Shown here piece after piece: positions 14,745 to 46,054 of a DNA stretch of 64,000 nucleotides. The notes under the pieces were generated by a model. That model was not told the DNA's origin, did not search any database, and worked only from the letters and a program-made list of their open reading frames with translations. The position numbers and the translations under genes were made by a program. The DNA is from Dimorphilus gyrociliatus (lineage: Eukaryota > Animalia > Annelida): positions 496,001 through 560,000 of the forward strand of contig CAJFCJ010000021.1 in NCBI GenBank assembly GCA_904063045.1. The letters run 5' to 3'. The first letter of the stretch is position 1; the number at the start of each line of letters is the position of its first letter.

Positions 14745-17700
14745 CTAATAATTAGCGCCATAACCGCCGTAATAATCATATTGTCCATCTCCATATTGGC
14801 CATTTCCGTAATTGCCCATGTCTCCGGTATTATATCCCTGCGAATAGTCATTATAATCGTCTTCCTTCTCTTCGTAAAACATAAATTGTGAGCCAGTTTG
14901 GCTGTTAACAACACTTCCAGCAATTTGTCTTTGAATTCCTAAGGTTCCACTTGCCTGCAGTTGACCAATTCCGTATGGAGAATAACCTTGATATTGTTCA
15001 TTAGGATCTCCATTGTACATATTGCTTCCTGTGATAGCAGCAGCGCCTGCGCCATTTCTTCTTGGTGACTTGCTTGGGGCTCGTTTTTTGCCTTTTTGTT
15101 TTTTATTTCTTGGAGGCCTCTCTGGACTCTTTGATTTTGGTGCCGGCTGAATTACTGGCTGAGCTGGAGTCTGGCCCGGATTAACCATCTGAGGAGACAG
15201 ATTTTGATCAATTTGACCAATTTCTCCATCTTTTCCCTTTTTGTTTAATTTCTTGGGATGTTTTCGCAAATAATGCCATCTCGCCAACACTACTATTAAA
15301 CCAATAAGAATAGCACCACCACCGGCGCCTAAACATGCATAAACTATAGTATCTTTGTTATTAGAGTTCAATTTTCGATTTTCGCATCTTTTACCCTCAA
15401 ATTGTGTATGACAGGTACATTTTTGTTCTCCGTTAGCTTCATCTTCGCAAATACCCCCATTCAAACAGTAAGGTACCATATCTTCTCCTTTCAGTGCCTG
15501 AGTTGCATTAGGATTTATTTTCTCCAATTTGCAAAGGGGTATGCATACTTCATTAATTTTGTCTTCAGCTGACGCATCAGTGGACGCTGTGTTTGGGAAA
15601 TATGTTTTCGTGCCATCTATTCCCCTATTTCCCGGACATGTTTGACATTGACTGTTTTTATCATTGAATTGAAATTCGTCATAACCACATTCTGTACAAT
15701 CTACTTTATTTGATGTTGTATTGAAGAACAACTTCTCACCATTATCACAAACTTTGCTTGGTGAGAATGAAAAGACAATTGGTTGACTTTTCGGATCTGC
15801 AGCATCTAAGTCACCAAGCTTTCCTGTGGCCAAAGCCACCTGCAGTCTATCATTAATTTCTTTTAGTAAATCCTCCTTCTTATTGCCTATGGAAGAAGCT
15901 CCAAGGTCATACTCCGCGATGGCACTTCCCTTTCTAAAACCTAAGAATAATAGTTGATATGTAAATGAAATATCAGCTAAACCACTTCTGAGAGCTGATA
16001 AAATGTTATCTTTATTTGTTTCATATGTTGTTGTACCGGGGATAATAAGTTCAGGAGTGTAAACTATGGATGTAAATCTAATAGTAATTCTGAAGATATG
16101 TAAATTAGCCGCTTCTGTACAATCTTTGACGCTTGTGCTTGCCGTGCGTTTAGTTGTATAGAAACCAGGACATTTTTTGCATTTTCGAGCTGGCGAACCA
16201 AGATAGTAACCTTGATCGCATGGTATACACCTATCATCTGTATTTGACCAATGGCCCTTAGTACATATTCGTAGATCGCAGTCTTCTCGCCTTTTCGTTC
16301 CTTCTGTGTCAGTTGTTCTTCCAATCGGACACGCTTGACATTCGTAGGCAAATCTTGTTACTTCCTTAGCAAAATCATTAAAATCGTTATCTTTGTAAAA
16401 GCCAACTGGGCATTTCGAGCAGGTGGTAGTTTTATTGTCCTTAAGATACTCTCCTGATCTACAATAGCTAACACATTCGTCTGTGGAATTAGAGCCTTTT
16501 CTCTTTGTGCCTCTTAATGCTCCGCATGAAATGCACACCGTATTATTAAGCACTTCATTTGATGTTTGATATTTATCGTAATCGCAATCGACACATTTGC
16601 CTGTATCCCCATCCCACTCTTGTCCTGAATGACAATCAGTTTCTCTGCAATCGTCTATGCTAGTACTACCTTCAAAAAGAGTTTGACCTCGGAGAAAGTT
16701 TGTCTTCTCACTACAAGAATAGCACTCAGTCATGAAGGGTGAAAGGAATTCTTTATCGTCTTTATATGTGCCTTTAGGGCAATTTTCACAATCTGAACCT
16801 TTCAAATATTTTCCAGCTGGACAAGAGGCATTACAGAAACTAATGTCTGTGGCGGCTGGCTTTGTTGTGTTGAATCCGGGATCACAAGCGGTACAATTGA
16901 CATCTTGTGTCAAACTAAAACTTCTATAAGTTCCTTGAGGACAATCAACACATTGATCTTGTTCATTTTTACAACCATCACCAATTCTCTTTTGACCGGC
17001 TTTACATTTTATTCGACAACAATCACTAGATGCCTGTGCTCCAGTCTTTGCTGTTGTTTTACCCTCCGGACAGCTCAAACATCTATTATCAATTTTATCA
17101 CGACTGTAAAAGCCGTATGAGCAGTCAACACATTTTCCCCCTGCCCCTAATTGCTGACCACCTGGACAAGCAGTAGAGCATTCCGTAATGGAAACAGATC
17201 CATTTTTTCGGTTGTCCGTTCCAAAAGGACATGGTTTACAATAAGTTTTACCTTTTTCTTCTTGATAGAATCCTGGTTTACACATAGTACACTTACTACC
17301 ATCCCACATTGATCCTTTTTCGCAGTTATCTGTAATAATAAAAATAAAGAACAGGATAATTGTTTTCTCCTTTTTTTTTTAATATAAGAATTTACCATAG
17401 CATTCATCTTCAGCTCGAGCTCCTATGTTATCGGTTGTTTTTTCGTTGGGGCATTTCTTACAGGCACTCTCTGTTGAATCGGTAGAATAAAAACCAACTT
17501 CACAGAAATCACATTTTTTTGTTTCTTTGTTGAAAACTGTTCCAGATGTGCACTTCACACATTTATCACCGGAAACTTGATAGTTTTCATCACAAGAATA
17601 TTCCAAGGAAAAGGAAAATCTAGAAGTGTCAACGTTTTCAGCGCCAGCAATATCCGGCTCATTAAAGACCTCAGTCTGCAGTACCATTTGAGAAATCATA

Positions 17701-45000: not shown

Positions 45001-46054
45001 TTATTTCTTTTTTTAAATAGACTATTGCGATAAAGGATATTATTATGATTCGAAAAGATCTATGTGCTTACCATGTAGCAAAGGATATTTTAAGGATAAA
45101 GAGGGAAAAGCCGAATGCACAAAATGCCCTACCGGAGATACAACAGCGAAATTTGCTTCAACTGAATCAAGCGATTGTAAAGGTATGTCATTAGATGGAC
45201 ATGTTCTATTAACGAGTTACAGTAAATTGCAATAAACATTTCTATTTATAGATGGATGTAGCCTTATCGGTGATGCTTTCTGCCAATCTCGGGGAGTTTG
45301 TCAATCCAGCGTATGCCGTTGCGAGGATGGATGGAAAGGGAGGCAATGCGAGACTGCTGTTCCAGCAGACACTAATACAGATATGATTCGATACGGCGTT
45401 ATTGGAGGAGTTTCTGGCCTTATTCTTATTGCTTCGATAGCTATAGGCTATTGCCTAATTCGTAGGCGTGTAATTGCTAAGCATAAGAAGAAGAAATTAG
45501 AAGAGCCGGAAGAGAAAACCAAAGAAAGTAAAAAGAAGGAAAAGCTAAAGAAAGAAAAAACTAAGAAACAGAAGGATGGAGTTAAATTCAATCCAGTAGA
45601 GGAAATCGTTCCCGAAACAAAATCTCAATTGAACGATGATAAATCAACTGATATTGAATCAATTGCACCTTCAATGACAATGGAATTACATTATCGACCG
45701 ATGGGTGTTGTCTCGCCCAGTACTCGTTCACTCTTCTCTGACGCGTCGTCATTAATACAATCGCAAAATGCCACACTCCCAAAAGCTGAATACGTATTCT
45801 ACGAAAATAACGAAAGTCAAAGTGTAACTAGTTCATATTCAACCCAACCGAGAAAACCACCTCCTGATCCTCCAAAAGTCAAACCGGGATCCGTAATAGC
45901 AAGAGCATTCGTTAACAACGATGATATGGATAGAGCAGATTACGAGAATGCGGAGAGATCTTCAGAATATTATAACGTTGCTATGGATAATGATGATGAT
46001 GAAAGAGAGTATACAAATGTAGCACCGACGAGACCAAGCTTTAAAAGAAGATAA
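30063..46054 (+). CDS. Giant Uninflatable-like type-I receptor, paralog B (~3700 aa, ~44 exons), same domain order as paralog A
   Basis: ATG 30063 with signal peptide [23 protein letters not shown] ~30578-31026, LDLa ~31266-31373, CUB x3 ~32371-33560, CCP/EGF/HYR 33560-36900, GCC2/3 37450-37950, EGF array with PAN (38211-38456) and WxxW (39424-39800), LamG 41122-41900, GCC2/3 array 43342-44470, SEA 44611-44940, [25 protein letters not shown], stop TAA 46054. Junctions traced by hand are GT-AG and keep frame; individual boundaries may be off by a few bases. Confidence 0.88.

What the first reader, a model, noticed from the sequence alone, without database searches (positions are those of the whole stretch)
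14745..46054. Head-to-head pair of ~4000-aa Uninflatable-like receptors bracketing an innexin
Seen: two divergently oriented genes with the same domain order from CTL-LDLa-3xCUB through to SEA-EGF-TM, but heavily diverged in sequence, with an innexin between them (310 bp from A's ATG, ~1.3 kb from B's ATG). Established: Drosophila Uif is a giant apical receptor with CTL, CUB, CCP, FA58C, EGF, HYR and LamG domains. Inference: this is an old inverted duplication that may form an apical-surface/cell-junction module. I found no FA58C domains in either copy, but both have PAN, WxxW and SEA domains, so this may be an undescribed receptor architecture.
Basis: partly seen in the sequence, partly recalled or inferred. 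Interest (0 to 1): 0.8.

Follow-up and report, generated by a model that had tools for sequence, protein, structure and literature searches.

The report
Uif-like receptor pair flanking an innexin
Two giant, divergently transcribed surface-receptor genes of the Uninflatable family do flank a gap-junction (innexin) gene in the annelid Dimorphilus gyrociliatus, but they belong to a lineage-specific trio of fast-evolving paralogs and nothing shows that the innexin works with them.

Summary
Gene A (minus strand, 27233 to 14745) is the annotated 4,002-aa DgyrCDS12799. Gene B (plus strand, 30063 to 46054) is 43 exons and 3,724 aa in my model. They align end to end in one BLASTP alignment at 27% identity, with the same domain order. 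A single-exon innexin lies between them, 309 bp from A's ATG and 1,311 bp from B's.

- **Family:** both genes belong to the Uninflatable (Uif) family, as a lophotrochozoan branch sister to ecdysozoan Uif.
- **Third paralog:** C (DgyrCDS12702) lies on another contig. Trees and intron positions favour A+C, so A and B are probably not sisters, though A+B is not rejected (AU p = 0.08).
- **Architecture:** lack of FA58C is normal outside Ecdysozoa. PAN and WxxW sit inside EGF modules at the same positions in mollusc homologs. Only the membrane-proximal SEA domain was found solely in this trio.
- **Innexin:** it is one of about 30 loci in a genome with about 209 genes per Mb. A close relative keeps the trio but also the unrelated clathrin neighbour. 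RNA contigs show separate transcripts, and co-expression was not tested.

Sibling notes on this same window cover the intron asymmetry, PAN, WxxW and SEA. Overall this is a new variant of a known kind, of modest interest.

The parts
14745..27330 (-). Gene A (DgyrCDS12799, 4,002 aa), a Uif-family type I receptor. CDS exons: 27233-27156, 27097-27031, 26915-26834, 26742-25797, 25701-25113, 25057-17396 (7,662 nt) and 17329-14745. The 5'UTR reaches at least 27330.
   Evidence: 100% match to P0001. Exon fit to the annotated protein. Introns 1-3 seen as spliced joints in RNA contigs, with a contig end at 27330. Pfam architecture.
20964..21140 (-). A: PAN/apple domain (aa 1894-1952), lying in a 93-aa insert between conserved EGF cysteines C1876 and C1968.
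   Evidence: Pfam PAN_1 25.9 bits against a cutoff of 21.4. The insert is bounded by invariant EGF cysteines in the family alignment.
20118..20402 (-). A: Mucin2-type WxxW domain (aa 2140-2234), nested in another EGF module.
   Evidence: Pfam Mucin2_WxxW 53.4 bits, E 4.5e-14, full profile 1-88.
15786..16121 (-). A: membrane-proximal SEA-like domain (aa 3545-3656) with the motif FRKGSAIA.
   Evidence: Pfam SEA only 14.1 bits, E 0.054. It aligns with the SEA of paralog C, which does pass Pfam at 32.2 bits. A profile of the five modules finds annotated SEA domains elsewhere. Genome search with that profile finds exactly three loci.
15276..15347 (-). A: transmembrane helix (about aa 3803-3826), followed by a cytoplasmic tail of about 175 aa.
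   Evidence: Read from the sequence and the alignment of the C-terminal regions.
27467..28816 (-). Innexin gene, single exon. CDS 28751-27543 (402 aa). The transcript spans at least 27467-28816.
   Evidence: Pfam Innexin 312 bits, E 5e-93. RNA contigs cover 27467-28816 and do not bridge to A. It is 94% identical to the syntenic ortholog in the relative, dN/dS about 0.05.
28817..29734 (.). Region of about 0.9 kb between the 5' ends of the divergent innexin and B transcripts. It presumably holds both promoters.
   Evidence: RNA contig ends at 28816 and 29735. Nucleotide identity to the relative is 74-76%, against 52-62% for most short introns.
29735..46054 (+). Gene B: my 43-exon model, CDS 30063-46054, 3,724 aa. 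A Uif-family type I receptor paralogous to A.
   Evidence: Own gene finder. Introns 1-4 confirmed by RNA joints and the 5'UTR starts at 29735. Exon-wise conservation in L003. Exon-wise Pfam. End-to-end alignment with A.
38211..38456 (+). B exon 20: PAN/apple domain on a symmetric phase-1 exon. It is inserted between ...CSCPTGKSK (end of exon 19) and GFSGKRCE (start of exon 21), apparently between the last two cysteines of an EGF module.
   Evidence: Pfam PAN_1 25.3 bits against a cutoff of 21.4. Exon phases and flanking sequence.
39424..39796 (+). B exons 24-25: WxxW domain split by a phase-0 intron, nested in the EGF array.
   Evidence: Pfam Mucin2_WxxW 33.5 bits on exon 25 alone, profile positions 31-88. 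Exon 24 carries the W-x-x-W start.
44611..44940 (+). B exon 41: SEA domain with the motif FYPGSIVV at the predicted beta2-beta3 turn.
   Evidence: AF2 model, pLDDT 71, order beta-alpha-beta-beta-alpha. The top Foldseek hits are SEA domains: 2e7v, TMPRSS6, MUC16. Alignment with the Pfam-significant SEA of paralog C. Genome hit at window 44613-44936.
45392..45460 (+). B: transmembrane helix in the last exon, preceded by one EGF.
   Evidence: Read from the sequence, the alignment and an EGF hit on exon 43.

Best explanation
A and B are two of exactly three paralogs (A, B, C) of a lophotrochozoan branch of the Uninflatable (Uif) family in Dimorphilus gyrociliatus.

Each encodes a giant single-pass surface protein. 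The domain order is CTL, LDLa, CUB, Sushi/EGF_CA, HYR, an unannotated family module, cysteine-rich Ephrin_rec_like repeats, an EGF array, LamG, HYR, Sushi, a second Ephrin_rec_like array, SEA, EGF, TM. PAN and WxxW lie within the EGF array, each apparently inserted inside an EGF module.

The trio arose by two duplications after the annelid-mollusc split and before the split from a closely related species. A and C probably share the later duplication. B kept the ancestral intron-rich structure, while A and C lost nearly all 3' introns. All three evolve fast.

By inference from Drosophila Uif, they are apical-membrane proteins that bind extracellular matrix or other ligands. The SEA domain with a G-S motif next to the membrane suggests mucin-like autoproteolysis into a non-covalently held heterodimer.

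The innexin between A and B is an ordinary, strongly constrained member of a family of about 30 loci, with its own transcript. Its position is best explained as passively conserved microsynteny in a very gene-dense genome, not as a functional module.
For: Identity and collinearity.

Family placement: the ecdysozoan Uif clade and a lophotrochozoan clade are both supported. The A+B+C clade gets 100/99.

Third paralog: found in the own genome and annotated as P0378. Only three loci carry the trio's SEA module.

A+C grouping: 97/97 in the careful mixture-model tree and 95-97 in the quick trees.

Intron positions:
- B and C share 9.
- A and B share 2.
- A and C share 2 that B lacks.
- A and C both lack all of B's introns (about 24) 3' of alignment column 1940.

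Domains:
- PAN and WxxW pass Pfam in A, B and C.
- The same insert positions hold PAN or WxxW in mollusc homologs.
- SEA is supported by Pfam in C, by fold, and by my own profile.

Fast evolution: A 58-64%, B 56% and C 62% amino-acid identity to the relative, against innexin 94% and clathrin 98%.

Innexin:
- About 30 loci, none near C.
- Separate RNA contigs for A, innexin and B.
- Clathrin-A-innexin-B order kept in the relative.
- The genome has 208.86 genes per Mb, short intergenic regions, and no operons or trans-splicing (PMC7854359).

Uif biology: apical single-pass protein that interacts with Notch (PMC12867482, PMC13178913).
Against: - The order of the two duplications is not settled. 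Forcing A+B costs only 10.6 lnL (AU p = 0.08), and the 22-row LG+G4 tree leaves the trio unresolved.
- No annelid homolog outside Dimorphilus and its close relative could be retrieved. So 'after the annelid-mollusc split' rests on molluscs, one nemertean and one orthonectid, and long branches are present.
- B is my own model. Only 4 of its 42 introns are confirmed by RNA.
- The function, apical localisation and SEA cleavage are inferences.
- The innexin-B 5' ends are only about 920 bp apart, and that spacer is better conserved than short introns. Shared regulation is therefore not excluded.
Confidence: 0.7

Rival explanations
1. A and B are true sister paralogs made by one inverted tandem duplication, and C split off earlier. 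The apparent A+C grouping would then be an artefact of unequal rates, because C is the slowest copy and A and B sit on long branches.
For: - The AU test does not reject A+B (p = 0.08).
- The 22-row LG+G4 tree leaves the trio unresolved.
- A and B are physically adjacent and inverted.
- A and B share two or three 5' intron positions.
Against: - A+C gets 95-97 in four analyses, including the careful PMSF mixture model meant to reduce long-branch artefacts. Long-branch attraction would be expected to join A with B, not A with the short-branched C.
- A and C share two intron positions absent from B.
- A and C both lack all the 3' introns that B keeps.
- The A-B shared intron positions are uninformative. 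In that part of the gene C simply lacks them, and they may be ancestral.
Confidence: 0.2
2. The trio B-innexin-A is a co-regulated functional unit. On this reading the innexin and B share a bidirectional promoter region, A sits directly downstream, and selection keeps the three together to build apical or junctional surfaces.
For: - The arrangement is conserved in a second species.
- The innexin and B 5' ends are about 920 bp apart.
- The spacer is 74-76% identical between species, against 52-62% for most short introns. The innexin 5'UTR is 97% identical.
- All three genes are represented in the same transcriptome assembly, run X4.
Against: - The same conserved block includes clathrin heavy chain, which has no such link. 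The two species are close enough that microsynteny is expected anyway.
- Paralog C has no innexin neighbour, and about 30 innexin loci are scattered over the genome.
- Gene spacing of about 4.8 kb makes close neighbours the rule, and operons are absent (PMC7854359).
- No contig bridges innexin and A.
- Evolutionary rates differ greatly between the innexin and the receptors.
- No expression pattern data were available.
Confidence: 0.1
3. The genes are not Uif relatives. They would be independently assembled mosaic proteins of the SVEP1 or fibropellin type that resemble Uif only through shared common domains.
For: Databases name many homologs 'SVEP1-like' or 'fibropellin-1'. All the domains involved are promiscuous.
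Against: - Collinearity with insect, millipede and springtail Uif runs from the N-terminal CTL-LDLa-CUB cassette to the C-terminal EGF. It includes dozens of invariant cysteines and an unannotated family-specific module.
- No vWA or pentraxin domain is present in A (precomputed list).
- SVEP1-type proteins align only partially.
Confidence: 0.03

Closest known systems
Drosophila Uninflatable (Uif) and its ecdysozoan orthologs (for example P0017, P0018, P0010)
   Same: - Giant type I membrane protein.
- N-terminal CTL-LDLa-CUBx3 cassette, then Sushi/EGF_CA, HYR, the same unannotated module of about 300 aa, Ephrin_rec_like repeats, a long EGF array, LamG, HYR, Sushi, Ephrin_rec_like repeats, EGF, TM.
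- Collinear alignment over about 2,600 residues at 27-28% identity.
- Sister clades in the trees.
   Different: - No F5/8-type-C (discoidin) pair. In insect Uif it lies at 837-963, between EGF_CA modules.
- PAN and WxxW domains are inserted inside two EGF modules where arthropod Uif has only 10-17 residues.
- A membrane-proximal SEA domain sits where arthropod Uif has about 44 residues.
- Three paralogs rather than one.
- The function in annelids is untested.
Uncharacterised mollusc homologs. Group 1: Elysia P0005, Octopus P0006, Babylonia P0379. Group 2: Haliotis P0009, Littorina P0012, Elysia P0023, Mactra P0061.
   Same: - Same backbone.
- No FA58C.
- PAN nested at the same EGF position in group 2 (22.1-22.4 bits).
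- PAN and/or WxxW in an insert at the WxxW position in group 1: Octopus PAN 25.6 bits, Babylonia WxxW 61 bits.
   Different: - My SEA profile finds no SEA in any mollusc, arthropod or orthonectid homolog. Their juxtamembrane region holds extra Ephrin_rec_like repeats instead.
- In the family alignment each group carries an insert at only one of the two sites. The dinophilid proteins carry PAN and WxxW at two separate EGF modules.
SEA-domain surface proteins (MUC1, MUC16, TMPRSS6/matriptase-type proteases, perlecan)
   Same: - Membrane-proximal alpha/beta SEA fold.
- A conserved G-S pair at the predicted beta2-beta3 turn. B reads FYPGSIVV; from memory, MUC1 reads FRPG/SVVV.
- Top structural matches are SEA domains.
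- My profile of the trio's modules recovers the SEA domains of a starfish protein and of perlecan.
   Different: - Very low sequence identity.
- Only paralog C passes the Pfam SEA threshold.
- Cleavage is not shown.
- A (GSAIA) and C (GSTAA) depart from the canonical GSVVV.
SVEP1 / fibropellin-type mosaic proteins
   Same: They share Sushi, HYR, EGF, Ephrin_rec_like and LamG-like domains, and database names often use these labels.
   Different: They lack the CTL-LDLa-CUB N-terminus and the collinear backbone. SVEP1 has vWA and pentraxin domains, which are absent here.

Membership tests
Uninflatable (Uif) family | Signal peptide, giant ectodomain, single transmembrane helix, short cytoplasmic tail | tested here: met
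   Signal-peptide-like N-termini and one hydrophobic helix near the C-terminus in A and B, read from the sequence. No dedicated predictor was run.
Uninflatable (Uif) family | N-terminal cassette of C-type lectin, LDLa and three CUB domains | tested here: met
   A: Lectin_C 43.9 bits, LDLa 43 bits, two CUB by Pfam (42.5 and 53.8 bits). The third CUB position (aa 463-589) is supported only by family alignment. B: Lectin_C partial at 18.6 bits on one exon, LDLa 41.2 bits, three CUB stretches.
Uninflatable (Uif) family | End-to-end collinearity with insect Uif, including the unannotated central module | tested here: met
   Collinear BLASTP chains: A 39-3311 against P0017 26-3342, and B 41-3129 against P0017 31-3355. 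An 11-sequence alignment has invariant cysteines along the whole length. Central module alignment A3.
Uninflatable (Uif) family | F5/8-type-C (discoidin) domains in the Sushi/EGF_CA region | tested here: not met
   No PF00754 in A or in B exons. It is present in insect P0017 at 837-963. By the precomputed Pfam lists it is also absent from all mollusc, nemertean, orthonectid and hemichordate homologs. It therefore looks like an ecdysozoan feature rather than a family-wide one.
Uninflatable (Uif) family | Phylogenetic placement with Uif rather than with other mosaic EGF proteins | tested here: met
   The lophotrochozoan clade containing A, B and C is sister to the ecdysozoan Uif clade, with a hemichordate homolog as outgroup.
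Uninflatable (Uif) family | Apical membrane localisation and modulation of Notch or apical matrix | not testable with these tools
   Known only for Drosophila (PMC12867482, PMC13178913).
SEA domain (autoproteolytic type) | SEA sequence profile | tested here: inconclusive
   Paralog C passes (32.2 bits against 26.4). A scores 14.1 bits and B has no hit. The three modules are alignable, and a profile built from them hits annotated SEA domains.
SEA domain (autoproteolytic type) | Alpha/beta sandwich fold, order beta-alpha-beta-beta-alpha | tested here: met
   AF2 model of B exon 41, pLDDT 71.4. Six of the top eight Foldseek PDB hits are SEA domains, best E 4.4e-3 and TM 0.60. This is moderate strength.
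SEA domain (autoproteolytic type) | G-S cleavage motif at the beta2-beta3 turn, and actual self-cleavage | tested here: inconclusive
   G62-S63 are invariant in all five modules and lie between strands 51-59 and 65-73 of the model. Cleavage itself is not testable here.
SVEP1 | vWA and pentraxin domains | tested here: not met
   Neither PF00092 nor PF00354 appears in A or in the B exons scanned.
Innexin | Full-length match to the innexin profile | tested here: met
   PF00876 312.3 bits, profile positions 1-331 of 333.
Co-regulated bidirectional gene pair (innexin and B) | Divergent transcription starts less than 1 kb apart, and correlated expression | tested here: inconclusive
   The 5' contig ends are about 920 bp apart. 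Correlated expression was not testable, because only assembled contigs of whole-animal libraries were available.

The most novel reading that the evidence does not exclude
Lophotrochozoans carry an undescribed variant of the Uif receptor family. In it, PAN and WxxW modules are spliced into EGF repeats, apparently between the last two cysteines. In dinophilids an autoproteolytic SEA domain has also been added next to the membrane, which would make a mucin-like, shear-sensitive apical receptor. The conserved head-to-head spacer would then co-drive the innexin and receptor B in the same epithelial cells.
Probability: 0.12. Interest if true: 0.6.

Novelty: new variant of a known kind. Interest (0 to 1): 0.35.

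Why it matters
Recent literature calls Uif 'a conserved insect protein' (PMC13178913). I found no paper in the searchable library that mentions uninflatable together with annelids, molluscs or spiralians.

This locus shows that the family backbone is present in annelids, molluscs, a nemertean, an orthonectid and a hemichordate. Its accessory modules differ by lineage:
- discoidin domains in Ecdysozoa;
- EGF-nested PAN and WxxW in Lophotrochozoa;
- SEA in the dinophilid trio.

That gives a comparative handle on which parts of Uif are core and which are adaptable. It also offers a compact annelid model, with three paralogs, for asking what Uif does outside animals with tracheae.

The supposed link to gap junctions, which drove the original interest score, is not supported by anything beyond adjacency.

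Tried and rejected
1. The word search with a full-length family alignment returned mostly cubilins and LRPs, because the words came from the CUB/LDLa N-terminus. It added only two mollusc homologs.

2. The one exhaustive representative search used the central module including its HYR part. That was a design error, and multi-HYR proteins swamped the top 150. The few full-length matches I looked up by name were two named mollusc-type 'SVEP1-like' entries and several unnamed ones. No annelid was identified.

3. The third word search, with the slow-evolving paralog C of the relative, found the annotated Dimorphilus C, more molluscs and a nemertean, but again no other annelid. Timing of the duplications within Annelida therefore stays open, and this blank is not evidence of absence.

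4. The look-up of encoding contigs had no record for P0001, P0407 or P0012. Synteny outside the close relative could not be tested.

5. Pfam on 450-aa windows missed PAN and WxxW in A. Short windows found both above threshold.

6. Foldseek on the 361-aa central module gave only noise, with weak cadherin-23 and protocadherin-15 EC-MAD hits.

7. The AU test of A+B was not significant.

8. My gene finder skipped A's three small 5' exons when tested on A, so very small exons in B could also be wrong.

9. Operator rule on spliced models: the joined B model, the partial B of the relative and my joined C model were used only inside local scripts (BLAST, MAFFT, trees). They were never sent to a search, family or structure tool. 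Those tools received B exon by exon, by reference, and C by protein id or by a single-exon reference. A whole-protein scan of B was therefore left out.

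
Full report
**What is there**

The window is G000:C21:496001-560000 of Dimorphilus gyrociliatus.

Gene A lies on the minus strand from 27233 to 14745. Its product is identical to the annotated DgyrCDS12799 (P0001, 4,002 aa). Fitting that protein to the DNA gives seven exons, one of them 7,662 nt long.

Directly upstream on the same strand is a single-exon innexin (28751-27543, 402 aa, Pfam Innexin 312 bits). The innexin is therefore in tandem with A, with 309 bp from its stop to A's ATG. 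It is divergent from B, with 1,311 bp between the two ATGs.

Gene B lies on the plus strand. No B protein id could be retrieved, so I built a model with a small codon-usage and splice-site dynamic program. The model has 43 exons, ATG at 30063, stop at 46052-46054, and 3,724 aa. Two things support it:
- Spliced RNA contigs from public runs reproduce its first four introns exactly, and also A's first three.
- Most exons are conserved at 56% amino-acid identity in a related species.

The finder is imperfect. On A it skipped three small 5' exons.

**Collinearity and domains**

B 30-3538 aligns with A 33-3835 in a single BLASTP alignment at 27% identity. By MAFFT the identity is 32% over aligned columns.

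I scanned A in windows and B exon by exon against Pfam. Both give the same order:
1. C-type lectin, LDLa, CUB
2. Sushi with two EGF_CA
3. HYR
4. an unannotated module of about 300 aa
5. three Ephrin_rec_like repeats
6. an EGF array interrupted by PAN_1 (A 25.9 bits, B 25.3 bits; cutoff 21.4) and by Mucin2_WxxW (A 53.4 bits, B 33.5 bits; cutoff 22.4)
7. LamG, HYR, Sushi
8. an Ephrin_rec_like array
9. an SEA-like module, one more Ephrin_rec_like, one EGF, the transmembrane helix and a tail

A's third CUB rests only on the family alignment, as do B's second HYR and the Sushi after it. Neither gene has an F5/8-type-C domain.

The joined B model was used only in local scripts.

**The SEA module**

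Pfam gives only 14 bits in A and nothing in B. Four other lines of evidence support it:
- The modules of A, B, C and the relative's A and C align, with an invariant F..GS.
- Paralog C passes the Pfam SEA threshold, 32.2 bits against 26.4.
- An AF2 model of B exon 41 (pLDDT 71) has the order beta-alpha-beta-beta-alpha, with G62-S63 in the turn between strands 2 and 3.
- Its best PDB matches are SEA domains of a mouse membrane protease, TMPRSS6 and MUC16, at modest E-values.

A profile built from the five modules also picks out annotated SEA domains in a starfish protein and in perlecan. It finds nothing in any mollusc, arthropod or orthonectid Uif homolog. In the Dimorphilus genome it hits exactly three loci: A, B and C.

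**Family**

A and B align collinearly with insect, springtail and millipede Uif proteins over about 2,600 residues at 27-28% identity. They align equally well with long uncharacterised mollusc proteins. An 11-sequence alignment has invariant cysteines from the N-terminal cassette to the last EGF.

In the trees, ecdysozoan Uif forms one clade and the lophotrochozoan proteins form its sister. A hemichordate homolog was used as the outgroup. These genes are therefore Uif-family members.

The discoidin domains of insect Uif (P0017 837-963) are absent from every non-ecdysozoan homolog by the precomputed Pfam lists. Their absence here is ordinary.

The PAN insert of A lies between conserved EGF cysteines 1876 and 1968. 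One mollusc group has a counterpart of 91-100 aa at the same place, and PAN_1 passes threshold in Haliotis and Littorina. The WxxW insert has a counterpart of 183-195 aa in the other mollusc group (PAN in Octopus; WxxW 61 bits in Babylonia). Arthropod Uif has only 10-17 residues at both sites.

EGF-nested PAN and WxxW are thus shared between annelid and mollusc homologs. They are not peculiar to this locus. All these mollusc proteins are unnamed predictions, and I found no paper linking uninflatable to spiralians.

**A third paralog**

One hit of the first search (P0004) came from the same sequencing sample as A's ortholog P0002, but from another contig. Searching the window's own genome with it found a third gene at G000:C20:1.775-1.788 Mb, with a 2,334-codon open frame. 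My 19-exon model of it matches the annotated DgyrCDS12702 (P0378, 3,967 aa) except for the first exon. C has the same architecture, plus an extra PAN between the first two CUBs.

With orthologs of all three from the relative added, the careful site-heterogeneous tree gives:
- A+B+C 100/99
- A+C 97/97

The quick analyses gave A+C 95-97. A 22-row LG+G4 tree left the trio unresolved. Forcing A+B costs 10.6 log-likelihood units, AU p = 0.08.

Intron positions add independent characters:
- B and C share nine positions.
- A and B share two.
- A and C share two that B lacks.
- A and C both lack all of B's introns (about 24) in the 3' 60% of the gene.

I therefore consider A+C the better-supported grouping. 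The adjacent pair would then not be sister paralogs, but this is not settled.

**Age**

In the trees the trio post-dates the split from molluscs and the nemertean, and it predates the split from the relative. The low identity overstates its age, because these proteins evolve fast. Identity between the two species is:

| Gene | Amino-acid identity to the relative |
|---|---|
| A | 58-64% |
| B | 56% |
| C | 62% |
| Innexin | 94% |
| Clathrin heavy chain | 98% |

Non-synonymous divergence is 0.28-0.33 for A and C, against 0.03 for the innexin and 0.01 for clathrin. No other annelid homolog could be retrieved, so the timing within Annelida is open.

**The innexin**

It is a well-conserved gene (dN/dS about 0.05). 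It is one of about 30 innexin loci in this genome, many of them single-exon, and none lies near paralog C.

RNA contigs give three separate transcription units:
- A from at least 27330 downward
- innexin from 28816 to 27467
- B from 29735 onward

Almost no depth was seen between innexin and A, and no contig bridges them. Contigs cannot prove absence.

The relative keeps the order B, innexin, A, but it also keeps clathrin heavy chain convergent on A's 3' end. The published genome description reports 208.86 genes per Mb, short intergenic regions, a median intron of 66 bp, and no operons or trans-splicing (PMC7854359). Close neighbours are therefore the rule here, and conserved order between two close species is expected.

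One point favours shared regulation. The innexin and B 5' ends are only about 920 bp apart, and that spacer is 74-76% identical between species, against 52-62% for most short introns. That is what two adjacent promoters would look like, and it does not show co-regulation. Cell-type expression could not be examined.

**How it most likely works**

This part is inference. By homology with Drosophila Uif, A, B and C are probably apical surface proteins. Drosophila Uif is an apical, single-pass adhesion-type protein needed for tracheal inflation, and it interacts with Notch through its EGF repeats (PMC12867482, PMC13178913). Their lectin, CUB, PAN, WxxW and LamG modules would bind matrix or glycan ligands. 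The membrane-proximal SEA, if it self-cleaves at the G-S motif, would make a two-chain receptor that can shed its ectodomain under force, as in mucins.

**Verdict**

The pair is part of a lineage-specific trio of a known family. Its 'new' domains are mostly shared with mollusc homologs, the SEA domain is the only trio-specific addition found, and the innexin link is unsupported.

Noticed in passing
window 21840-22922 (-), A aa 1300-1660; alignment A3: A module of about 300 aa with no Pfam match is conserved in every Uif-family member, insect Uif included. The AF2 model (pLDDT 75) shows an Ig-like/HYR sandwich, a small beta domain with Sushi-like cysteine spacing, and then a beta-alpha-alpha-beta-beta-alpha unit that resembles a second SEA-like or membrane-adjacent-domain fold. 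Foldseek gave only noise, with weak cadherin-23 and protocadherin-15 EC-MAD hits.
   Followed up: partly
G000:C20:1772000-1791999 (L014, L015); P0378: Third paralog C (DgyrCDS12702, 3,967 aa). It has 18 introns, all in the first 1,644 codons, then a single 6,926-nt exon. It carries an extra PAN domain between CUB1 and CUB2 (28.6 bits). It is the slowest-evolving of the three copies.
   Followed up: yes
window 14745-46054 against L001, L003 and L005: The receptors evolve far faster than their neighbours. Between the two species, A is 58-64%, B 56% and C 62% identical, against innexin 94% and clathrin 98%. Non-synonymous divergence is about 0.3 against 0.01-0.03.
   Followed up: yes
window 27543-28816: The innexin has unusually low synonymous divergence from the relative (pS 0.44, against 0.67 for clathrin and 0.75-0.78 for A and C), and its 5'UTR is 97% identical. 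This may reflect constraint at the nucleotide level. It is unexplained.
   Followed up: no
window 31027-31265 (B intron 4): This 239-nt intron is 77% identical to the relative, more than most short introns. One RNA contig of run X4 shows a joint 31035->31099 with CT..AC ends, which is a minus-strand splice signal. It could be a small antisense or alternative transcript.
   Followed up: no
window 8777-13607 (+): Clathrin heavy chain lies here as two long ORFs, convergent on A's 3' end. The relative's contig has the same neighbour.
   Followed up: partly
window 27860-28804 and 30812-31026, runs X2 and X3: Contigs from another organism label are 90-95% identical in nucleotides. In the innexin many of the differences are spaced by multiples of three bases, as expected for synonymous change in a closely related strain or species.
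   Followed up: no
window 54516-55703 (+) and 60123-60551 (-): Downstream of B there is a DOCK-type DHR-2 exon and an MCM P-loop exon. These are unrelated housekeeping neighbours.
   Followed up: no
mollusc homologs: Molluscs have two old Uif-like groups. One carries an insert only at the PAN position. The other carries an insert of about 185 aa (holding PAN and/or WxxW) only at the WxxW position. The dinophilid trio has both inserts at separate EGF modules, yet it groups with the PAN-only mollusc group plus a nemertean. This implies either loss of WxxW in that mollusc group or a tree artefact.
   Followed up: partly
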